A model generated the notes under the pieces. That model made no database searches, was not told the origin of the DNA, and saw nothing but the letters and a program-made list of their open reading frames with translations. A stretch of 63,716 bases of DNA, filler included, from Octopus bimaculoides (lineage: Eukaryota), in NCBI RefSeq assembly GCF_001194135.2. It is 5 parts of 4 records of this genome, joined end to end, with 100 filler letters (N's around TTAATTAATTAA, not from the genome) between each part and the next. Parts side by side here need not be neighbours in the genome. Positions count along the whole stretch, not along the records: positions 10,322 to 40,718 come from NC_068991.1; 4 more parts are not named here. The stretch is one strand, 5' to 3'. Positions 26,476 to 39,298 of this stretch are shown in pieces (within the stretch, counting starts at the first letter, position 1; every line of letters starts with the position of its first letter). Made by a program: the position numbers and the translations under genes.

Positions 26476-26637
26476 GCTGAAAAGCTCTTGAAGAAACAGA
26501 TGAAGAAAGAACGAGCTGATAGAATTTTAAATGAACATAAACGGCTGAAACAGGTGTTGTTGATCCAAAACTTGTTGGACAGTTTTGGAATGGAGCAGGT
26601 TCGCAATGATTTCCGAAATGGCTGGCATTCAGCAGTT
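26476..26637 (+). CDS. CAPRIN1: Caprin exon (AEKLLKKQMKKERADRILNEHKRLKQVLLIQNLLDSFGMEQVRNDFRNGWHSAV)
   Basis: cttag|...|gtaagt; 162 nt, phase 0-0; Caprin dimerisation-region similarity (KRLKTVLELQYVLD...VRTDLKQG). Confidence 0.93.
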
Positions 26638-27379
26638 GTAAGTATTCATATAGAACTTAAGTAAGTTGGGATTTGTGAAAAAAGACATTATTGTATAAAG
26701 TCAGAACCAAAATTTAGTTTCATTTCTAACTTACTGAAAGATCAATTAACTTGATTAATTTTAATATTCTTTTAATTTGAATCTTGTTATTTTACAAATT
26801 TGCAAAGACAATCTTTGCTTCTTTGACATGTCTAGGTAGGCAGGGTTGCATGGTTTTTGGGGTTCAGTCTCACAGCATCTTGAACAATTTTCTTCTGCCA
26901 AAGCTTCAGATAAGCTAACATTCTGAGAGTAAAATTTGCAAGACAGAAGCTTGATAAAAGTCCATTGGAGAGACTGGTCTTGTTTTTGGGTTGAAGATTT
27001 AATCCATTACCTGTCCTTTAGTGAAGTCCACTTTGTACTTTACCTTCTCTCACACCAGTCTCAGAGAACGCATAAACAGTCTTCATTGCTCTTCCTTCTC
27101 TGTGTTGAGGAAACATTACAAAACATAGATTAGCTGAAACTGTAATTTACGTCAAACTTATGTTGATTTATGAATTTCATTGTCAAGACTATAGAATGAA
27201 GAACTAGTCAGGTTTTGTTACTTCTCAACATAAAGCATTGTTGATTCCACTTAGGTTTGTTGTCAAAATTACAAGATGTTTTCTTTTACTATTTTCATCA
27301 GTCGTGCTTGTCGGAATATTTTTTTTTAAAGGATTCGGTTGATGTTTATAAAGTTAATTTTTAATTTTTTTTTCAACAG

Positions 27380-27620
27380 GTTCTGACTGAAGAGAATCTG
27401 ACTCAGCTGGATAATATATACAAACATATAAGTCCATCTCGAGATAATCAACAGGATTTTATTACTGCTTCTGAACATTTATGTAGCTTATTGGATGGCA
27501 AAGACAAAGCTGTTCTTGGCACCACTTATAAAGAATTAAAGAAGCTGATAGATTTAATTCTTGCGTGTGGCTACTTTGAAAATGCTCCTCGTTATGACGC
27601 CAATGGACCTTCAACAGAAG
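27380..27620 (+). CDS. CAPRIN1: Caprin exon (VLTEENLTQLDNIYKHISP...ASEHLCSLLDGKDKAVLGTTYKELKKLIDLILACGYFE...)
   Basis: aacag|...|gttagt; 241 nt, phase 0-1; matches ASIHLWDLLEGKEKPVCGTTYK. Confidence 0.95.
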
Positions 27621-29951
27621 GTTAGTTGCTTCACTTCTCTCCTCCCCCCCCCATTCTGTCTGTGAGAACTGCAAAGTTAATCAAATCATCCTTTTGTGTT
27701 TTTCATTACTATTTTCCAAATTATTTTGTTACCCACCCAGAACCTTAAATAGGATTTCTGTATAAAAAGTTCTCTTGATCAGTTTTGTTTATTAGAAGTG
27801 AATATAGATTTGAATATAAAGTGTTAGTGACCAGCTGCTAACAGGGATTGTCTTGCACAGTTGTTTAAAGAAGTACTTGTAATATACTGAGATATGTAAC
27901 ATCATTCCACTATGAATTATTTCTAGAAATTTGTGGCTTTGTATATGAAATGATTATTTGAAGTGGTGAGGTCTATAAAAGGAGGGTTAATTGAATGTTC
28001 TTTTTTGAAAAAATTACATTTGATTACATTTGTGGGTGTTTTGAGATGAAATATGATAGCATTGAAAGAAAGGGGTCAATCCCTATATACAAATTGACAG
28101 GGATCAAGGGATGTTTGTACACACAGTCTTTGACACCTTGTATTCCATACACTTATGGTAGCTTCTAGAGATGAGAATGTTCTTAGCATTCAATATGTGG
28201 GTTTTGCTCATATTCAGTGTTGTATGTATGCATACAACACTCTGATGTTACTTATGAGTTGTGATATGTACAGCCACCTGCCTAAAGCTTAATCTCTGCT
28301 TCTCCAATAGTGTCATGGATTTGTAAAATATAATCTAAGTCTTTAGGAAAGCTATACATAATGTTTGAACATCTTTAAAAACTTGTTATTCATAAGTTTG
28401 TTAAACCCAAGCATGGTTAATAGATTAAGGTAAGTAATAGTATTTTGTTGTTTTTTTTTTCTAAATTTCTGACTAAAAAACATTTTTTTAAAATGCATTG
28501 CTTAGGAAGTATTTCAGTAACTTTTTATCTGATCACTGTCGCACGAGTTCAAACCCATTGAAAGACATTATTGTGACCTGCGATCCTTCCTTTTAAATCC
28601 AGTCTATGTATAATTCAGTAAAGCTCCATTTTATGTTGTGGTGATAGGGTCTGCCCTGACTGGTGTCTATGGTTACATTCAGGACATGGAAGCTTTTCTT
28701 TTTTTTCCCAGAGGAGGTAGCTTTCAATGTTTTCAGATGATAGGTTACTGTGTTGAAGTGGACAACTGCAGTCATTCTGACTATGCATGCTTACACACAC
28801 ACACACACACACACTAATGAATGGTGATGTGATTGAAATCTTTTGCAATAATAATGTTCCAGATTTGTCTTTCATCATAACCTTGGGTAGACAAAAAACA
28901 AAATTAATGAAGTCTTGAACCTTTGGTTCAATTAATTTTAATAAAATTCTGAAGAATTTAGTATGAAAAAAAAACTTTGCTGTAAACTTGGTGAGTGGAA
29001 GATAACATGCAATTTTAATGGTAGGTTTTTAGTAAAAGGGAAGTTTGTATCCTAGAACCAGGAATGGTCTCAGTTGGATTGGTATTGAAAGGGGGGTAAA
29101 CACTGGAAGAGAGTTCATGGGTACAACCAATTCTTGATTTTTTCCAAAAAAATGATTTAAGAATTAAAGTTCATAAACATAGATTATGGTGAGTTTTTGG
29201 TATTGTATATAGAATTAATGTAACTAAATATCGAGTACTTACTTTAGAGTGGTTTCTTTTATGATCACCAGTTCTGAGGATTGTTACTGTTTGGAAGTAT
29301 ACTGCACATAGATTCTGGGTTTATCATGTTGAGGTATACTTACACAATTCTAAACACAGTTTTTAATGAAAATAAAATATTTTAATTACTTGAAAATACA
29401 TTGAGAATATTTTCACTCCATAGTTTAGTGATGAAAGACTGAGAAATGTAAGGATCAAATGATAATTTGATTTATCTCAGTTTTTGTGAGTTTTTATTGT
29501 CATAAGAGGGGTTATTTTTATTAAGTCTGTCCAAAATTTTGATTATTTTAGAAATAAAATGCACGAACAGTATTTAATTTGAGACAAGGTCATGAAAGGG
29601 TCAAGTGGTTCATCAAAGAAATATCTTTGTTAATCAGCTAGTAGTTAAATTATTTCATCATCATCATTTATTGTCCATTTTCCATGCTGGTATGGGTTTA
29701 AGCATGGTTTTTGTGGCTGAATGCTCTTCTTAATGCCAACGACGTAATAGAGTGGACCTTTTCTAATTAACAATATTAGATTAAAATAACACTTTTTGCT
29801 GCAGTTAAATTTCTGGAAAACCACATTGGATTTACAAACATAAAATGTTTTCAGTTATTGTAAATATCTGTTTATTGATAGTTAAAAATCTGTTTTGTTA
29901 AATCATAATTTCTTCTGTGAGATATTTAAATTTGAACACATTGCATATCAG

Positions 29952-30272
29952 CTCCTGTTGCTGAAAAATCCAGTGAAAAACCCGCGGAAGAACCAGCTAC
30001 AGTTGTTCCTGTTGAAGTGAACCCAGCTGAGCTGAAGCAACACACAGAGGAAGTTGTAGCCCCAAAACTGGAACCTGAGAAACAGCCCGAAGTCATACTA
30101 GAACCAGTGGACAACAGGAAAAACAATACAAGACTGGAAAATCACATTGATAACGATTCTTCTTTCTTCACGACTGGCTCTTCTTTTCCACGTCATCGTC
30201 CTTTCCAAGAAATTGTTTCTTCTGTACAAGGAAGTTTTAACTTCTTGCAGGAATCTACCATAGATTTAGATT
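29952..30272 (+). CDS. CAPRIN1: Caprin exon, acidic linker plus G3BP-binding segment (RPFQEIVSSVQGSFNFLQESTIDLD)
   Basis: tatcag|...|gtaagt; 321 nt, phase 1-1; matches QGPYNFIQDSMLDF (G3BP NTF2-binding YNFI motif). Confidence 0.92.
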
Positions 30273-31336: not shown

Positions 31337-31977
31337 CTCCACAACATATGGACCCCGCGGTAGTAGCTGCTCACCCGATGCCAGCAGTCCGACATGCACC
31401 AAATACATCGGTAGATGTTAACAGTCTCACTCAGGCAGGATTTGTTGCTCCTGGCTACGACCAAACTGCTGCTGCTGTCGCAGCAGTTGCTGCTGCACAA
31501 TCTCAACAACAACAACAACAACAACAACAGCCGCAGCAGCAGCAACCCCCACATCAACCAGCACCACCACCACCACCCCCATCAACAACTGTGCCTGCTT
31601 CACATCATCCAGTGATTAAGTCTACACCTCAGCCAACTGTGCAACATGTGCAACAAGCACTTCCACCATCAGTGCAACCTAATTCAGCAGTGACATTGGA
31701 TGTTGCATCTGCTAATCCAGCTCAGGCCCATGCTACAGCTCTCTTATCGACTACGCCTGCTGCTGCTGCTGCCGCTGCCAATGTGGTCAGCCAACAACTG
31801 GACTACTCGAACCAAGCATTCACTCAGAATGCAATTTCTCAAAATTTATCCACCGATTCTTTATTCCATTCGGTGGAAGACTGCCCACCCACTCACTCTA
31901 TGATTGGCCAATCTGTAAACGATACTTCTGTACCTGCATTTGAAATTCCGACCATTCCCTTGCCAAACCAAACACAA
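31337..31977 (+). CDS. CAPRIN1: Caprin exon, Q/P/A-rich disordered region (SPQHMDPAVVAAHPM...PLPNQTQ)
   Basis: ttgtag|...|gtgagt; 641 nt, phase 1-0; MDPAVVAAHPM matches LDPAIVSAQPM; polyQ, polyP and polyA tracts. Confidence 0.92.
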
Positions 31978-33300
31978 GTGAGTAGATTTCTGTTCTCAAC
32001 AATTTTGTTGGTTTCAGATTTGACATTTTTGTGAAAAGTAACAAAATTTAAAGCCTACAGACATAAAAAAAAAAAAAAGATTAAATACTGAAACTTCTTC
32101 CCCCCCCCCACTCCTACAAAATGCCTCATAGAATCATTCAGTTGTGTTAGCTTTGAAGAATATTTTTACTGTTTATTTTTGAGTAAAAGAAAACGATAGA
32201 ATATAAGAATCTTCTGGGTTTCTTAATTAAAGATGAATTCTAGAAAGATTCATTTTACTTGGGGAATAGAATGTGATGGATGGACAGAGAAATAAAGCTC
32301 TTATTATATTCAAATGGACTTTTGATTTGTGGGAAAATAGGTTTATTTAAAATCTGAATTCGTTTTCAGAAATCCATGTTCTATCAAAAGATACGACTTC
32401 GCAGTACATAAATGTTACTTCCAGTCTCTTCCAAGTATTAATGATTTGTAGAAACATTTGCTGTTAGAGGGGAGATAACCTCTTCTCTGTAGTAAAGCTG
32501 ATGACCGTCCAAGTTTGTCATTGTTTCCATCGACTGACTCGATTCAGTTATGAACTTGTTTACACTCTCCACACTAAGCTATGATGTTAGCCATAACTCA
32601 GCTTGCTTCACTCTAAACTGATCAGTTTTGCTCTTTTTTCTTCTTTTTCTTTTCTGAAGTACCATCCTATTACTTGGTGGTGTTTTTATATTGTGATTTG
32701 GATTGACCAGTGGCTTGTGGGTGCCATACAACCCATGTATTGATGAGAGTTGGCAATCGGTATAGCAACAAATTTAGTGTACATTTTGCCAAGGTTCAGT
32801 CCCCTCTTGTTTATCATAAGTCTTCTAGGCTGTAACAGAGGAATTTAAAACTGGTTGCTCTTGGGCGTTTCTCTATACGTATGACCTGGTTCTTGCAACT
32901 GAATTTATGTATGTTTTTGTGTTTTATACATACATATATATATATCCCTATGTATATGCATGCGTATGTGTGTGCACTCATGTTTGCATAGGCTGATTTG
33001 TTGGTCTTCTGCACTCTTCCTGTCTATGAAATTCCTCTCCTGACGAAGATATTGGTCCACCACTGGCTCAAGTCAGTTATTTATCCAAGGTGCTCTACAA
33101 TGGTGGAAGACTTGGGAATTACTCAGGAACATTGAACAGAACCAAGACAGGAATATTATTTTACAAGCAATTGAAATTATAACTCTGTTTCCTCTCTGTT
33201 TTTGAACTTATTTCACCTGTGTACATTTAAATTGTCTCTTTCATGATTCATGCAGTATTTCTTCAATTATTAACATGTATCCTGTTTATGAATTTTCCAG

Positions 33301-33333
33301 TTAACAGATGGAGCTATCAGTCCTTTTGTGAAG
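33301..33333 (+). CDS. CAPRIN1: Caprin candidate micro-exon (LTDGAISPFVK)
   Basis: aattttccag|...aag|gtaact; 33 nt, phase 0-0, in frame with both neighbours. Confidence 0.6.
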
Positions 33334-33717: not shown

Positions 33718-33892
33718 GATGCCAGCTCCCAGTCTCACGCTGTTAAAAAAATTACCAACTTAAATGCCAATGCAGCCGTATTCCAATCTATGAATGCCAA
33801 TGCAGCTGTGTTCCAGCCACAACATACAGACGCCACCCCGAATAATGAAGTGAAGAGTCAGTTATCACCTCAACCTACAGATTACAATCAGG
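33718..33892 (+). CDS. CAPRIN1: Caprin exon with duplicated PAM2-like motif (TNLNANAAVFQSMNANAAVFQP)
   Basis: tttccag|...cag g|gttggt; 175 nt, phase 0-1, consistent with the next exon. Confidence 0.85.
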
Positions 33893-33965
33893 GTTGGTAA
33901 AGTTTCATGAAATTATCTCTGGAGTTTGGTTTCTGGGATTTGTTACAGCAATATGTATGTGCGCG

Positions 33966-34002
<37 letters not shown>

Positions 34003-34539
34003 CACTGTGTGTATATTTACAATATTTATGTCTACACAGTCTTTTGATTTCCAATGGATGTGAAATGATGATGATGAATCATCTTTGTGTCTTATTCTTG
34101 GGTATATCCAGGTTTCCTTACTGGATTGAAGTAAGAAACCTTTGTTCATAAAGTAAGACTAGTGGTGTCTTGTTATCCATTGTCGATGCACTTGGAAGTG
34201 AGGATTAGAAGATGTCATTGCTACATTAGTTTTAAAGACCTGCAATCTTAGTTAAAATCTTGATATGTATCAAGCAATGAGCTTAGTGGCTATATGTTGA
34301 GAGGTATGTATATATAGCTTCATTTATAGCGCTGGTGGTTGTATGTTGATATTGAACAATGACACCACATGACAATCATAAATTAGATCAGAATGATTGA
34401 AATGTTGTTGAGTTATAATTCATATTTTATAAACATACTTTTTAAAGAAGAGGAATATGGGAGATGGGACCTTTTTTGCGGGCACAGATTGGGCTCATGG
34501 ATAGGGTCCTGTGAGTGAATCGACATAAATAGAATGCTT

Positions 34540-35330
34540 TTAGGACATCACTTTTGCTGTGACAGACTGATCTTGAGCTGCACAGCAAATTGCCATTATC
34601 TCAGTTGTTTGTTGTCTCCTCTGTGAGGCTCAACATCTTGAGATTAGCCTTCACCACCTAATCCCATATCTCCCTGGGTCTCCTTCCACAAGTTCCATTA
34701 ACTTTGAGCAATCAGCACTTTACACACATGTCATCACCTGCATACATCCTCTGCCCATACTGGTGCAGTCTGCTTTCTTGCACATGACATTTGATACCTC
34801 ATGCCCAATTCTCCTCTCAGTACATTTGCACTTTGCACACCCAGAAGAGCATACTAGCTTCATTCCTTGTTTTCACATATCCACTGCATTCAGGGCCCAC
34901 ATTTCACTACCATGTGGCATTGCTGTTCAACAAGCATCATACAATCTGCTTTTCATTCTGAGAGAGAGAGAGAGAGAGAGAGACCTTTTGCCACCAACAG
35001 TTGTAATAGCTCTCTGACATTTCTCCATTCTATTTTTATTCTAGCAACTTTATTTTCAGAAGAACCTCCCCCCACAGCTAATTAGGTCATCTAGGTAATA
35101 GAAATTCTCACCTGGGCATTCAAGAAAATTTACTTCCTGTATGTCATGCAAAGACTAGTTTCTTTAACCTTCCTGCAGAAAGGCCTCATAAAACCAGCCC
35201 CTTTTTGTTCATCTGCCAGTTATGATCAAAGAACATATGCAGATATAAAATGCTGTTGCTCTGTTTTCTGAGACTTAATTGTCCTATTGACCACTTTATC
35301 TACTCACCTTAACATCATTCTTGTAACTAT
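34540..35330 (-). mobile_element. Decayed RTE LINE (RT C-terminal part)
   Basis: rc reads RNVRELLQLLVAKGLSL...MLHGSEMWAL, homologous to 15290-15420 and 51030-51150. Confidence 0.75.
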
Positions 35331-37031
35331 GGCACGTATCTCATCCGCTTTTGTGCTGCCAGTTACTCCCCACTCTCCTTAGAACCCTTTCATTTTAACT
35401 CCATCCCTCAATTTCAACGTCATCCTTTTCTGCTTTATTTTCTACTGCTCACCCTTTTCTGTGTGTCTCAAGGCATCTCTTTCTCTCTCCTCAGACAGAG
35501 CTTAGGACTACCATATCTTTAACACCCTTCCATATCTGCTCTCATTCTCATTACCCTTTTATATCTACAGTCCACTGTCCCCACCTCTCTCTTTATACTC
35601 CCTTATACATCAGATCCTCATCACTCTCACCCCCTACTCTTTACTTTCTGATCTATCTACAGGATTACACTGCTGCTCTCCACTCCACCTGTACTGCTTC
35701 TTATCTCTCACCCTTCCTCCTTAGCTGCTCCTATTTCTTTTACCCCTACCCGCATATTAATGTTTACCATTGACCATCCCCCCACCCTTGTTCTTTTTAC
35801 TACATTCACCTCTCTTCTCTCTCTCTCTCTTTCTCTCTCAAATGAACTTATCTACCCACCCAGTTCCTATGTTCATATTCTCTCTCATCTTCACTTTGTA
35901 CCTTGAGTACGTGCACTGACACCCTGTCCCTACCATCTTTATCTCTCTTTCCAGTTACTCTCACCCACCCTTATCTAAGGCAGAGTATCCATGTGTCTTC
36001 TCCACAGCAAAATACTTGTCTCTCTTTCATACTTTAGCCTGTCTATGACAGGCATAAAGCCACTTCCCTTTTTACTGTAACCCCACTCATTCGAAGGGTC
36101 TTTTTCCTTGTGGCTTACTTGGCAAATTCACTGAGAAAAGCCCCTTGTACACACTGTAAAAGGGTTGGTGTTAGGAAGGGCATCCAGCTGTAGAAGTAAT
36201 CGCAATGCAGACATTGGAACTCATTGGATCCTGCCAAACCACCTGACTCTTGCTTGCCTGGAATATGGTGATGATGATGATGATCAAAAGCTGATCACTT
36301 GCTCAAGGTGCTGCACAGTAGGACTGAACTTCAAACTACATGGTTGGGAAACAAGCTTCTTACCTTCACAGCCAATGATTTCATTTTATAATTATTCATC
36401 CCTTGTTATTTTTACAGATTATGTCAATAATATTGGGTTTAGTTACTGCTACTACTATTACTCCTACTACTATTAATAATATTAACAAGAACATTGAATT
36501 TGAGTGCATTTAAGCAGGTATATAGGTAACCTAACAAAATAGCAGCCAAACCTCTCTGATATAGCCTATAATATCTTAAAAATAAGAAGGGTAAGTTAAA
36601 AAATGTAACTGTAAGCAACAGATTTAGTGGATCAGGGCCTGAACTGGGGACTGAGCAACAAAAATAACACTAGACTCCCAAATGGATTAAAGGGTTGAAA
36701 AGAGGGAAACAAATGTTTCATGAAATTTTGTCCCATTTTTAATGAATTAAGTTGGTTTATTCGAAGGCAAAGAGTTCAACTCCCAGGAGAGTTGTTGTTT
36801 TGTGCCTTTAAATCTCATTATACACCACAATATTCACACTTACAATCAGCTTAAAAACTTCTTTCTCCTATATTCCTCTCTTTTCCCCTGCAAACTATCC
36901 CAGCTGATCATCAATATTTCTGATCAGAAGTAACTGTTCTGTTGCTTATGACACAGCACAAATCTAAGTTAATGTAACAAATAAAATGATTTGACTGTTG
37001 ATAAAATTGTTTAATTACTGTCTAATTTCAG

Positions 37032-37205
37032 GAAACAGTTATTCTCCTGGATATTTCCCAAGAGGAAGCTTTCAGAATCGTAATTACCGTGGTAACAGAG
37101 GCAGTCGAAGTGGTTTAAACAATGGCTTCAATCGGAACAGTAGTGGTAGTAGTAGTGGAGGAAGTGGCGGTGGTGGTGGTGGCAACCGAGGAGCTTACAC
37201 CAGGA
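37032..37205 (+). CDS. CAPRIN1: Caprin exon, RG/RGG-rich region (GNSYSPGYFPRGSFQNRNYRGNRGSRSG...GGNRGAYTR)
   Basis: atttcag|...|gtaagt; 174 nt, phase 1-1; RG-rich like the Caprin-1 C-terminus. Confidence 0.9.
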
Positions 37206-37344
37206 GTAAGTATCTTCTCCCTTTTTTTTGGCTCGTTTAAATTGTTACATTAATGATTGATGTGTTAATTACAAATCTCTATAAACATGTAGTTAAATAC
37301 TTCAAATAATGATTTCATTATCACCAACATAAATCAATAGTTTT

Positions 37345-37625
37345 CTTCAGCCAGTGCCACTTGACTAGCACCTGTGCCGTTGGCTTGTAAGAAGCACCAT
37401 TCGAGTGTGGCCAGTGTCAGTGCCACCTGACTGGGTTCTGTGCTGGTGGCACATAAAAAGCACCCACTACACTTTTGGAGTGGTTGGCGTTAGGAAGGAC
37501 ATCCAGCTGTAGAAACCTTGCCAAATCAGACTGGACCCTGGTGCAGCCTCCTGGCTTGCCAGTTCTCATTCAAAACCACCCAACCCATCCCAGCATGGAA
37601 AGCCGACATTAAACAATGAATTTGA
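37345..37625 (+). mobile_element. RTE LINE 3' tail fragment
   Basis: ggcacataaaaagcacccactacac...ggcgttaggaaggacatccagctgtagaaa...caacccatcccagcatggaaag. Other tails at about 36140-36285 (+), 53215-53410 (+), 39785-39880 (-) and 29655-29750 (-). Confidence 0.8.
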
Positions 37626-38819
37626 TTGTGATGATGACACCAGTGAAGGCCTTGAACCAACTCACCACTCTCTCTCTCTTTTTGGTTGGAATGTTTAGAA
37701 CAAGATACCTTAACAACAACAACAGCATGATTGATTCATTACTCGACTTGCTATGTGATATATAAACTCTACTCCGTCTTCAGTCAACACATAATCAGCA
37801 CCATCTGACAGCCACTCCATCTCTTTTTCTAATAAATGTAAACAAAAAACCCCCCAAAAATTGGTTTCTCTATTTTAATCAAGACAACATCAGATGCATC
37901 TGTTTCTATTTTGTGAATATTTTTGTTAAATTATTCCATTGTCATGGTTGAATACAAGGTTTTACAGCCAATTCCAAATTGTGCTGTTTTCTCACCTGAT
38001 TCTGTTACCATTTTTTACTTATTTCACCAGTCATCTGCCTAACTCCACTTCATCAAATTACCGTCATCATCATCATCATCATCTTTCCTCACTTCAACAT
38101 TCTTAATGTCTGTGGACCTACTGACCTGAACATTGAGTTCCTTTCCTGCAGACACAGATCTTTATGAAGGACACAGTTTTGGGAGTAGGGTACTGCTCCT
38201 CCTTCAACTTTCAATTATATTGTTAGAATATCTTTTGATACAATTTCTATCCAAGTTGCAATATAAATGAATATTACTCTTAATTTTCTAATTGTGACAT
38301 ATAAAACTGAACAAATACTTCCAAAGTTCACTATTTGGAATGGGTTCTGTAAATGTCAATTCGAAAAACCATGAATAAATTCTGGAATTAAATCTTGTGG
38401 AATTAATGACCAGTTTTAGAAACATAAATTCTTTCATCTCAACTTCACACAAAAATCAACTGCAATCACATACATGTCATTAGATTGCAGTTTCTCTTTC
38501 CCTCCTTACAATTGGTTTAACCATGTCCTTTGTAAACTTATCCAAACTTGTCTCTTTTATTCATGCTTAAATGATTGCAGTATATTTTCAACATGTATAA
38601 ATGTGTGTGTGTGTCATGTTTTCATGTATATGAATATACTGATATATATATATATATATATATNNNNNNNNNNNNNNNNNNNNNNNNNNNNNNNNNNNNN
38701 NNNNNNNNNNNNNNNNNNNNNNNNNNNNNNNNNNNNNNNNNNNNNNNNNNNNNNNNNNNNNATATTTAATGCATGTCTGTGTGTATATATAAGCCATGTG
38801 TGAATGTATATATTGCTTA

Positions 38820-39050: not shown

Positions 39051-39298
39051 GCAATTACTCGGCTTTCTCCAGTGGCCGTGAGTACCGGACAGCTGACAAT
39101 TATGGCGCTGCATTGAATGGTACATCGTTTGGAAGTGGCTTCACCAAACGCAGCAGTGCCAGTCCGGGAAGCACTGGAAATACATCAAGTATCGCTCGCA
39201 CTGGAACCGGCAGTAGTGGGACCAGTGGAAATGGGGGCAGTATGCGAGGTGGTGGCACAGGAGCTGGCGGAGGTGTGTGCGGTGAGGAGCTCATCTAA
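39051..39298 (+). CDS. CAPRIN1: Caprin last visible coding exon (SNYSAFSSGREYRTADNYG...GFTKRSS...GGGVCGEELI*)
   Basis: cctgtag|; phase 1; FSSGREY and FTKR resemble FSAPRDY and NFKR. The ten exons total 2145 nt, divisible by 3. An internal donor (gtgagg at 39282) may give a different C-terminus. Confidence 0.8.

What the first reader, a model, noticed from the sequence alone, without database searches (positions are those of the whole stretch)
33754..33819. Tandemly duplicated PAM2-like motif in caprin, differing only at synonymous sites
TNLNANAAVFQS-MNANAAVFQP fits the PABP MLLE-binding PAM2 pattern (L/M-N-x-x-A-x-x-F-x-P) twice, reminiscent of the paired PAM2 motifs of eRF3. The two DNA units (aatgccaatgcagccgtattccaa and aatgccaatgcagctgtgttccag, 30 bp apart) differ at three positions, all synonymous third positions, which suggests selection on the peptide. 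From memory, vertebrate Caprin-1 has a single similar segment (INVNAAPFQSM). I do not know of a PAM2 described for caprins. If real, caprin would bind PABP directly, and this lineage has doubled the site.
Basis: partly seen in the sequence, partly recalled or inferred. Interest (0 to 1): 0.72.

Follow-up and report, generated by a model that had tools for sequence, protein, structure and literature searches.

The report
Doubled PAM2-like motif in octopus caprin
An octopus caprin-1 gene encodes two back-to-back copies of a short peptide that looks like the motif used to dock onto poly(A)-binding protein; one copy is conserved in caprins from molluscs to humans, where it holds the ataxia mutation P512L, but binding to that protein has not been tested.

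Summary
Window 33754-33819 (+) encodes TNLNANAAVFQS-MNANAAVFQP inside a spliced exon (33718-33893) of an octopus caprin-1 gene. Two 24-nt units lie 30 nt apart and differ at three third-codon positions.

The motif is old and single-copy in molluscs, annelids, nemerteans, an echinoderm, a hemichordate, amphioxus and vertebrates ([MLI]-N-x-[NS]-A-x-x-F-Q-S). In human CAPRIN1 it is I506-M516, and the ataxia mutation P512L falls at motif position 9.

The doubling occurs only in the cephalopod caprins, in two clades. Their 26-residue peptide is invariant, while 7-20 of its 26 codons differ synonymously between lineages.

The motif lies in a predicted disordered region. It meets the published PAM2 definition at positions 3, 4, 7 and 10. 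A profile built only from caprin motifs picks two MLLE-bound PAM2 peptides as its best two matches among 177,635 PDB sequences.

Against a PAM2 reading: Ser12 and Gln11 are conserved where PAM2 has Pro12 and a variable residue; caprin-2 breaks Ala7; sampled arthropod caprins lack the motif; binding is untested. It is not the G3BP-binding motif, which sits elsewhere in the protein. I found no paper describing a caprin PAM2.

Verdict: a real, selected linear motif and a plausible but unproven PABP MLLE ligand.

The parts
33718..33893 (+). Caprin-1 coding exon carrying the motif. It starts in phase 0; the last G completes a codon in the next exon.
   Evidence: Open frame and splice signals. tblastn of O. 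sinensis caprin-1 X2 residues 553-624 aligns here.
33754..33789 (+). PAM2-like 12-mer, copy 1: T1 N2 L3 N4 A5 N6 A7 A8 V9 F10 Q11 S12
   Evidence: It has the upstream context (KK-I/F-T) and the FQS ending of the single-copy motif of other caprins.
33784..33819 (+). PAM2-like 12-mer, copy 2: Q1 S2 M3 N4 A5 N6 A7 A8 V9 F10 Q11 P12. It overlaps copy 1 by two codons.
   Evidence: It is present only in the cephalopod caprins.
33763..33822 (+). The two 30-nt (10-codon) duplication units, NANAAVFQSM and NANAAVFQPQ. The first 24 nt of each differ at 33777, 33780 and 33786.
30191..30271 (+). Context in the same protein: homologue of the G3BP NTF2L-binding motif of human Caprin-1 (RHRPFQEIVSSVQGSFNFLQESTIDLD; core SFNFLQES at 30233-30256). 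It is separate from the finding.
   Evidence: The human motif 370-YNFI(Q)-374 within 356-386 is described in PMC10170197.
26476..27622 (+). Context: two exons (26476-26640 and 27380-27622) encoding the Caprin-1 dimerisation domain (HR1).
   Evidence: Pfam PF18293 match to residues 39-150 of the joined exons. tblastn. AF2 pLDDT above 90 over HR1.

Best explanation
The stretch is a short linear docking motif in the disordered C-terminal half of caprin-1. It was inherited from the bilaterian ancestor and tandemly duplicated (one 10-codon unit) in an ancestor of the sampled cephalopods. Its most likely partner is the MLLE (PABC) domain of cytoplasmic poly(A)-binding protein, so it would be a PAM2-type motif. 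In that reading, Leu or Met at position 3 and Phe at position 10 fill the two hydrophobic pockets of MLLE, Asn4 contacts the MLLE glutamate, and Ala7 packs on the MLLE methionine. Caprin would then bridge PABP on poly(A) tails to G3BP (through its separate FNFLQES motif) and to RNA (through its RGG region). It would compete with other PAM2 proteins such as PAIP1/2, eRF3, ATXN2 and USP10. The two cephalopod copies start 10 residues apart and their 12-mers overlap by two residues. They therefore probably cannot hold two MLLE domains at once; more likely they raise apparent affinity by offering alternative registers, as shown for eRF3. Shown here: the motif exists, is ancient, lies in predicted disorder, is under strong purifying selection, is doubled only in cephalopods, and fits the PAM2 core. 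Inferred: the partner, the stoichiometry and the functional consequence.
For: Gene identity. Motif in non-cephalopod invertebrate caprins: F1-x-M3-N4-[PAV]5-[NS]6-A7-x-[VEIM]9-F10-[QR]11-S12 over about 40 distinct 12-mers. It is also present in a hemichordate, amphioxus and an echinoderm and in vertebrates. It stands as an island of conservation (KKFxMNxNAxVFQSxY) among non-conserved columns. AF2 gives pLDDT 34-39 and no secondary structure over residues 566-592 of the O. sinensis protein, against more than 90 for HR1. The peptide TNLNANAAVFQSMNANAAVFQPQHTD is invariant in four cephalopod lineages whose caprins are 66-89% identical overall, with 7-20 of 26 codons differing synonymously and no replacements. 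The published PAM2 definition is --Phi-(P/V)-A--F-P, with Ala7 and Phe10 invariant, Asn or Ser at 4, and Leu at 3 as a major determinant (PMC2854688). Both octopus copies meet positions 3, 4, 7 and 10. Bivalve caprins read MNPNATEFQS, and three caprin representatives read LNPNADMFRP, MNANAAIFQP and MNPNAAMFHP, which include Pro12. An experimentally validated PABC ligand, Hendra virus P LNPAAVPFVP (PMC10132805), closely resembles human INVNAAPFQS. A profile built only from 29 caprin motif segments, searched against 177,635 PDB sequences, gives superPAM2 (8smo_B) and the Paip2 PAM2 peptide (1jgn_B) as its two best hits. The two residues that changed after the duplication, Met3 to Leu in copy 1 and Ser12 to Pro in copy 2, both move towards the canonical PAM2 (inference). 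USP10, another G3BP partner, has a functional PAM2 (PMC4810302).
Against: No binding data exist, and I could not model a complex. Ser12 and Gln11 are nearly fixed in caprins, whereas PAM2 has Pro at 12 and no conservation at 11; this suggests constraints beyond MLLE. Both octopus copies have Ala at position 5, and a Pro-to-Ala change there cost Paip2 five-fold in affinity. Position 3 is mostly Met, and it is Thr in amphioxus. Echidna caprin-2 has VTVNTAPFQAM, which replaces the invariant Ala7 and Asn4, yet it keeps the downstream block MQTVFNVNAPLPP. Vertebrates conserve about 23 residues (506-528), more than a PAM2 needs. The sampled arthropod caprins (bees, a sawfly, mosquitoes, a cricket, a mite) have no such motif. 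The PDB profile E-values (0.095 and 0.41) are not significant on their own. The PAM2 papers I read do not mention caprin.
Confidence: 0.5

Rival explanations
1. It is a conserved docking motif for a different, still unidentified partner. The PAM2 resemblance is coincidental, and the cephalopod doubling adds a second site for that partner.
For: Gln11 and Ser12 are nearly fixed, and in vertebrates the conserved block runs on to residue 528 (FQSMQTVFN[ML]NAPVPP). PAM2 rules explain neither. Caprin-2 keeps the Phe-Gln-x-Met-Gln-Thr-Val-Phe part while losing Asn4 and Ala7. Arthropod caprins lack the motif. Composition alone predicts that a loose pattern such as [LMIFV]N.[NS]A..F.[PS] occurs a few times by chance in a proteome (my own estimate, not a tool result).
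Against: Conservation is strongest at exactly the PAM2 contact positions: N4 and A7 in at least 90% of sequences and F10 invariant in the motif alignment. Some caprins have a fully canonical PAM2 that includes Pro5 and Pro12. The PDB search returns PAM2 peptides first. No alternative partner is known for this region. The mapped FMRP and G3BP sites lie elsewhere (PMC9499908; PMC10170197).
Confidence: 0.33
2. It is not a docking site. It is a local structural or solubility element that tunes caprin self-association or condensation. This is the reading suggested by the human P512L aggregation phenotype.
For: P512 is position 9 of the human motif. P512L causes insoluble aggregates enhanced by RNA, and the authors propose that the conserved stretch adopts a specific fold (PMC9499908).
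Against: AF2 predicts no structure and no contact for this region, with pLDDT 34-39. Solubility elements rarely need position-specific invariance of N4, A7 and F10 across phyla. P512L is described as gain-of-function, so it says little about the normal role. The two readings are not mutually exclusive.
Confidence: 0.1
3. The second copy is a neutral product of replication slippage in an Asn/Ala-rich stretch and has no function of its own.
For: The unit is short (30 nt) and the region is compositionally simple. Within one genome the codon identity is no more than chance given the peptide.
Against: Both copies are invariant at the protein level in four lineages and two clades, while their synonymous sites have diverged (7-20 of 26 codons). 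The flanking sequence does change.
Confidence: 0.03

Closest known systems
PAM2 motifs of PAIP2, PAIP2B, ATXN2 and PAIP1 (ligands of the PABPC1 MLLE/PABC domain)
   Same: A 12-residue linear motif in a disordered region with hydrophobic-3, Asn/Ser-4, Ala-7 and Phe-10. Known sequences: SNLNPNAKEFVP, SNLNPDAKEFIP, STLNPNAKEFNP, SKLSVNAPEFYP. Caprins: TNLNANAAVFQS and QSMNANAAVFQP (octopus), FPMNPNATEFQS (bivalves), GINVNAAPFQS (human). The Paip2 peptide and superPAM2 are the top PDB hits of a caprin-motif profile.
   Different: Caprins have Ser rather than Pro at 12 (except octopus copy 2 and a few others), a conserved Gln11, mostly Met rather than Leu at 3, and Val/Pro more often than Glu at 9. 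Binding to MLLE is not shown.
eRF3/GSPT1 overlapping PAM2-N and PAM2-C
   Same: Two adjacent PAM2-type sites in one protein. In eRF3 the pair raises affinity about three-fold while keeping 1:1 stoichiometry (PMC2854688). The Asn-Val-Asn turn of PAM2-N matches N-V-N of human INVNAAPFQS. From my own memory, not checked with a tool here, eRF3 PAM2-N reads LNVNAKPFVP.
   Different: In eRF3, Phe76 is shared: it is position 10 of PAM2-N and position 1 of PAM2-C (peptides 67-81 and 76-90). In cephalopod caprin the offset is 10, so Phe10 of copy 1 falls at position 0 of copy 2, and copy 2 has its own hydrophobic residue at position 3. The eRF3 pair is a proven MLLE ligand; this one is not.
Human CAPRIN1 residues 506-516 (INVNAAPFQSM), site of the ataxia mutation P512L
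   Same: It is the orthologous single-copy motif. Pro512 is motif position 9 (PMC9499908).
   Different: It is single-copy, has Ile3/Val5/Pro9, and is followed by a second vertebrate-specific conserved block (QTVFN[ML]NAPVPP) that is not PAM2-like. The paper treats it as a conserved region of unknown fold near the prion-like domain, not as a docking motif.
USP10 (FGDF motif plus PAM2)
   Same: A G3BP NTF2L-binding partner that also carries a PABP-binding PAM2 (PMC4810302). Caprin would have the same two-handle layout, one G3BP motif and one PABP motif.
   Different: The USP10 PAM2 is experimentally functional and lies next to its FGDF motif. In O. sinensis caprin the two motifs are about 250 residues apart (317-323 versus 568-589).
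Hendra/Nipah virus P/V/C 186-LNPAAVPFVP-195
   Same: A validated PABC ligand with Pro at position 9 and Ala at positions 7 and 8 side by side, as in human NVNAAPFQS (PMC10132805).
   Different: It is viral mimicry, and it has canonical Leu3, Pro5 and Pro12.

Membership tests
PAM2 motif (MLLE/PABC ligand), definition of Kozlov & Gehring 2010 | Hydrophobic residue at position 3 (usually Leu, occasionally Pro or Phe) | tested here: met
   Copy 1 has Leu and copy 2 has Met. Other caprins have mostly Met, some Leu or Ile, and Thr in amphioxus. Met is hydrophobic but is not among the residues listed.
PAM2 motif (MLLE/PABC ligand), definition of Kozlov & Gehring 2010 | Polar residue at position 4 (Asn, less often Ser) | tested here: met
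   Asn in both copies and in at least 90% of aligned caprin motifs.
PAM2 motif (MLLE/PABC ligand), definition of Kozlov & Gehring 2010 | Pro, Val or occasionally Thr at position 5 | tested here: not met
   Ala in both octopus copies. The feature is met in many other caprins: Pro in bivalves, Val in vertebrates. A Pro-to-Ala change at this position lowered Paip2 affinity five-fold.
PAM2 motif (MLLE/PABC ligand), definition of Kozlov & Gehring 2010 | Invariant Ala at position 7 | tested here: met
   Ala in both copies and in at least 90% of caprin motifs. The exception is caprin-2, with Thr.
PAM2 motif (MLLE/PABC ligand), definition of Kozlov & Gehring 2010 | Invariant Phe at position 10 | tested here: met
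   Phe in both copies, and an invariant column in alignment A2. It is lost in the slug Arion.
PAM2 motif (MLLE/PABC ligand), definition of Kozlov & Gehring 2010 | Pro (usually) at position 12 | tested here: inconclusive
   Copy 2 has Pro and copy 1 has Ser. Ser is the rule in caprins (32 of 41 distinct invertebrate 12-mers, all vertebrates), and Pro occurs in a few. The definition says 'usually'.
PAM2 motif (MLLE/PABC ligand), definition of Kozlov & Gehring 2010 | Lies in an accessible, disordered segment | tested here: met
   AF2 pLDDT 34-39 with coil over the motif. It is a conservation island in an otherwise unalignable region.
PAM2 motif (MLLE/PABC ligand), definition of Kozlov & Gehring 2010 | Physical, Phe10-dependent binding to an MLLE domain | not testable with these tools
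   No complex prediction or binding assay was available. The phage-display tables that might list CAPRIN1 peptides were cut when stored.
eRF3-type overlapping PAM2 pair | One Phe shared between the sites (position 10 of the first = position 1 of the second) | tested here: not met
   The offset is 10 residues, so Phe10 of copy 1 is position 0 of copy 2. The two 12-mers share only Gln-Ser (compared).
Caprin family | Caprin-1 dimerisation domain (HR1) plus a C-terminal RGG-rich region | tested here: met
   PF18293 E 8.6e-36. 94% identity to O. sinensis caprin-1 X2. RGG-type exons at 37034-37207 and 39053-39286.
G3BP NTF2L-binding motif of Caprin-1 (considered for this stretch) | Y/F-x-F-I/L-Q-D/E-S core (human 370-YNFIQ-374) | tested here: not met
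   The finding's peptide has no such core. The octopus homologue SFNFLQES is in another exon at 30233-30256.

The most novel reading that the evidence does not exclude
[quoted passage not shown] The early-onset ataxia mutation P512L lies inside that motif. Cephalopods have doubled it into a near-overlapping pair analogous to eRF3. Arthropods have lost it.
Probability: 0.45. Interest if true: 0.75.

Novelty: new member of a known kind. Interest (0 to 1): 0.6.

Why it matters
Caprin-1 is a core stress-granule and neuronal mRNP protein whose mapped handles are HR1 dimerisation, the FMRP site, the G3BP motif and RGG RNA binding. A direct PAM2-type link to PABP would add a fourth, testable connection. 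It would tie poly(A) tails to the G3BP network and put caprin in competition with PAIP1/2, eRF3, ATXN2, USP10, Tob and PAN3 for the MLLE domain. It would also give a concrete hypothesis for the strongly conserved stretch around human Pro512, whose P512L change causes childhood ataxia and is so far explained only by aggregation propensity. The cephalopod doubling would be a natural affinity-tuning experiment on that site. If the motif does not bind MLLE, it still marks an unassigned, deeply conserved docking site in caprin that deserves a partner search.

Tried and rejected
1. My first recollection was that this stretch is the G3BP-binding motif. That was wrong: the G3BP motif is human 356-386 (YNFIQ), and its octopus homologue is in another exon.
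2. phmmer of the single 35-residue octopus peptide against the PDB gave no hits. Only the profile of many caprin motifs worked.
3. Tandem Repeats Finder found nothing at score 30 or above.
4. I compared paralogue and orthologue codon distances to look for gene conversion. Eight codons are too few, and the numbers overlap (2-5 within species, 1-7 between), so the result is inconclusive.
5. Codon identity within the window as evidence for a recent duplication is not significant (P = 0.24).
6. I tried to name the taxa of the second cephalopod clade (P0003, P0004). The run accessions appear in no paper and the clusters carry no names. I infer, but do not show, that they are decapodiform cephalopods. 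No Nautilus sequence was found, so the duplication cannot be dated deeper.
7. The deep-mutational-scanning matrices for PABC with ATXN2 and PAIP1, which would show whether Met3 and Ser12 are tolerated, were cut when stored.
8. The proteome-wide phage-display tables for the PABPC1 bait hold no CAPRIN1 entry, but the main table was also cut, so this absence says nothing.
9. A global MAFFT alignment misplaces the vertebrate motif, so I located it by pattern and re-aligned short segments.

Full report
OBSERVATION. The piece 10322-40718 is eukaryotic genomic DNA (about 35% G+C, microsatellites, introns). Frame 1 from 33718 reads DASSQSHAVKKITNLNANAAVFQSMNANAAVFQPQHTDATPNNEVKSQLSPQPTDYNQ, and the other two frames are closed. 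The 22 codons T-N-L-...-Q-P occupy exactly 33754-33819. The repeat finder reports a single direct repeat, 33763-33785 and 33793-33815, with spacing 30 and 91% identity. The 24-nt units differ at 33777, 33780 and 33786, all third codon positions.

GENE. The open frames on the + strand assemble into a caprin. The joined exons match Pfam Caprin-1_dimer (E 8.6e-36) and are 94% identical to Octopus sinensis caprin-1 isoform X2. tblastn of that protein places exons at about 18905, 23944, 26476, 27380, 29951, 31300, 33298 (a micro-exon), 33718, 37034 and 39053. The motif exon runs 33718-33893, with a ttccag|GAT acceptor and a CAGG|gttggt donor. The organism is an octopus close to, but not identical with, O. 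sinensis.

THIS IS NOT THE G3BP MOTIF. I first recalled this stretch as the G3BP-binding site, which was wrong. The crystal-structure paper places that site at human Caprin-1 356-386 with core 370-YNFI(Q)-374 (PMC10170197). Its octopus counterpart, SFNFLQES, lies in another exon at 30233-30256.

THE MOTIF IS ANCIENT. Among the 88 caprins found with the window's protein, nearly all molluscs, annelids (Owenia, Helobdella), nemerteans (Lineus, Tubulanus), a sea star and amphioxus carry one copy at the equivalent place. Examples are KKFTMNPNAGVFQS, KKFQMNASAPVFQSMY, FPMNPNATEFQS, and KPFTMNANAAVFQSMY in a chiton. A hemichordate has INVNAPPFQS. The logo for non-cephalopod invertebrates is F1-x-M3-N4-[PAV]5-[NS]6-A7-x-[VEIM]9-F10-[QR]11-S12.

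In vertebrate caprin-1 the segment GINVNAAPFQSM occurs unchanged in 109 of the 120 listed proteins, from fish to human, followed by Q-x-VFN[ML]NAPVPP; the remaining listed proteins gave no match. A probe written from memory matched a database protein at 100% identity. Numbering anchored on Y370 gives I506-M516, with Pro512 at motif position 9. Pro512 is the residue changed in the de novo ataxia mutation P512L, whose authors noted an unexplained, highly conserved surrounding sequence (PMC9499908).

The motif is absent from the sampled arthropod caprins: bees, a sawfly, mosquitoes, a cricket and a mite. It is degraded in the slug Arion, where Phe10 is lost. It is altered in echidna caprin-2, which reads VTVNTAPFQAM.

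THE DOUBLING. Two copies occur only in the cephalopod caprins: the window, O. sinensis, Argonauta hians, and two unnamed transcriptome proteins (P0003 with two cluster members, and P0004). P0003 and P0004 are 89% identical to each other and 66-69% identical to the octopods, so they form a second cephalopod clade. It is probably decapodiform, but I could not establish the taxon. No other doubling appears among the 150 best representatives of 1,602 caprin-like clusters.

The 26-residue peptide TNLNANAAVFQSMNANAAVFQPQHTD is identical in all four lineages for which I fetched DNA, while 7-20 of its 26 codons differ synonymously between them. That is strong purifying selection on both copies.

The two peptides are identical, so any DNA difference must be synonymous. 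Five of 8 identical codons is what independent codon choice gives 24% of the time. Tandem Repeats Finder does not see the repeat. The DNA is consistent with an old duplication of one 10-codon unit (MNANAAVFQS, as in the chiton). Afterwards Met3 became Leu in copy 1 and Ser12 became Pro in copy 2, both towards the canonical PAM2; this ordering is inferred.

IS IT A PAM2? The refined published definition is --Phi-(P/V)-A--F-P. Ala7 and Phe10 are invariant, position 4 is Asn or Ser, position 5 is Pro, Val or Thr, Glu is preferred at 9, and Pro is usual at 12 (PMC2854688). Loss of the position-3 Leu in Paip2 costs about three orders of magnitude in affinity.

Copy 1 (T N L N A N A A V F Q S) meets positions 3, 4, 7 and 10 and fails 5 and 12. 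Copy 2 (Q S M N A N A A V F Q P) meets 3 (with Met), 4, 7, 10 and 12 and fails 5. Other caprins fill the gaps: bivalves have MNPNATEFQS, and three representatives have LNPNADMFRP, MNANAAIFQP and MNPNAAMFHP.

Known ligands quoted in papers I read are SNLNPNAKEFVP (PAIP2), STLNPNAKEFNP (ATXN2), SKLSVNAPEFYP (PAIP1) and Hendra virus LNPAAVPFVP.

As an independent test I built a profile from 29 caprin motif segments only and searched all 177,635 distinct PDB sequences. The two best hits were superPAM2 (8smo_B, E 0.095) and the Paip2 PAM2 peptide of the PABC complex 1JGN (E 0.41); the third hit was unrelated. superPAM2 is a high-affinity chimeric PAM2 from a PAM2/MLLE study. The E-values are weak, but both top hits belong to the tiny class of MLLE-bound peptides.

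AF2 on the O. sinensis protein with a 59-sequence alignment gives a confident HR1 (pLDDT above 90). It gives pLDDT 34-39 and no secondary structure over the motif. A linear motif embedded in disorder is expected to look like this.

EVIDENCE AGAINST. Gln11 and Ser12 are nearly fixed in caprins, which PAM2 rules do not explain. Position 5 is Ala in the octopus. Position 3 is Thr in amphioxus. Caprin-2 replaces Asn4 and the invariant Ala7 while keeping the downstream block. The vertebrate conserved block is about 23 residues long. Arthropods lack the motif.

No paper in the searchable library links caprin to PAM2, MLLE or PABC as a caprin feature, and none contains the peptide strings. The data sets that could have settled tolerance of Met3 and Ser12, or shown a CAPRIN1 peptide among PABC phage-display hits, were truncated in storage. 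Binding could not be modelled here.

MECHANISM (best reading, confidence about 0.5). The motif is a PAM2-type handle by which caprin docks on the MLLE domain of PABP. It would add a poly(A)-tail link to caprin's G3BP motif, HR1 dimer and RGG region, and it would compete with other PAM2 proteins. USP10, the other NTF2L ligand of G3BP, has the same two-handle design.

In cephalopods the two 12-mers overlap by two residues. They are therefore more likely to act as alternative registers that raise apparent affinity, as measured for eRF3 (about three-fold, 1:1 stoichiometry), than to bind two MLLE domains at once. The parallel to eRF3 is loose: the offset is 10, not 9, and Phe10 of copy 1 falls at position 0, not 1, of copy 2.

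RIVALS. (a) It is a docking site for another, unknown partner (0.33). (b) It is a solubility or structural element, as suggested by P512L (0.1; not exclusive of the main reading). (c) It is a neutral slippage product (0.03; contradicted).

NOVELTY AND SCORE. That the stretch is a real, selected, cephalopod-doubled motif is established. That it is a PAM2 is a well-founded but untested hypothesis, which I could not find in the literature available here. I rate it a candidate new member of a known kind, with interest 0.6. The interest comes mainly from the conserved human counterpart at the P512L site rather than from the octopus doubling itself.

Noticed in passing
window 31939-31971 (+): A second conserved island lies about 30 residues upstream of the motif: F-E-I-P-T-I-P-L-P-N-Q. 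The family consensus is PPxIPxPP / IP[LM]PNQ. It is also present in amphioxus (PTIPMPNQ), a leech (IPLPNQ) and several unnamed caprins. It may be another unassigned linear motif.
   Followed up: partly
window 33298-33333 (+): A 12-codon micro-exon (LTDGAISPFVK) matches O. sinensis caprin-1 isoform X2 residues 544-555 exactly. It lies just upstream of the motif exon and is probably alternatively spliced.
   Followed up: partly
window 33894-37033: The exon encoding DFAIRMKSSVDLKGR of O. sinensis isoform X2, expected between the motif exon and the RGG exon, was not found in any + frame of the piece. It may be isoform-specific, diverged or missing from this assembly.
   Followed up: partly
window 37406-37637, 14559-14789 (-), 22874-23049, 36132-36226: A dispersed intronic repeat of about 95-235 nt at 78-81% identity, with an inverted pair at 22874-23234. 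It is probably a SINE-like element. Its open frames (..LALGRASSCRN..) are not genes.
   Followed up: no
P0220, P0221, P0244 (caprin cluster representatives, taxa unknown): These caprins carry a motif that is a fully canonical PAM2 including Pro12: AFLNPNADMFRP, FTMNANAAIFQP and QGMNPNAAMFHP. So Ser12 and Pro12 interchange within the family.
   Followed up: partly
P0078 (Tachyglossus caprin-2) residues about 683-705: Caprin-2 keeps PFQAMQTVFNVNAPLPP but has Thr at motif positions 4 and 7. The vertebrate-specific downstream block therefore seems to be conserved independently of the PAM2-like half.
   Followed up: no
window 33955-34001 and many introns; N runs at 11179-11852, 22539-22684, 25606-25722, 38664-38761: There are (CA)n and (TA)n microsatellites and several assembly gaps inside introns of the gene.
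   Followed up: no
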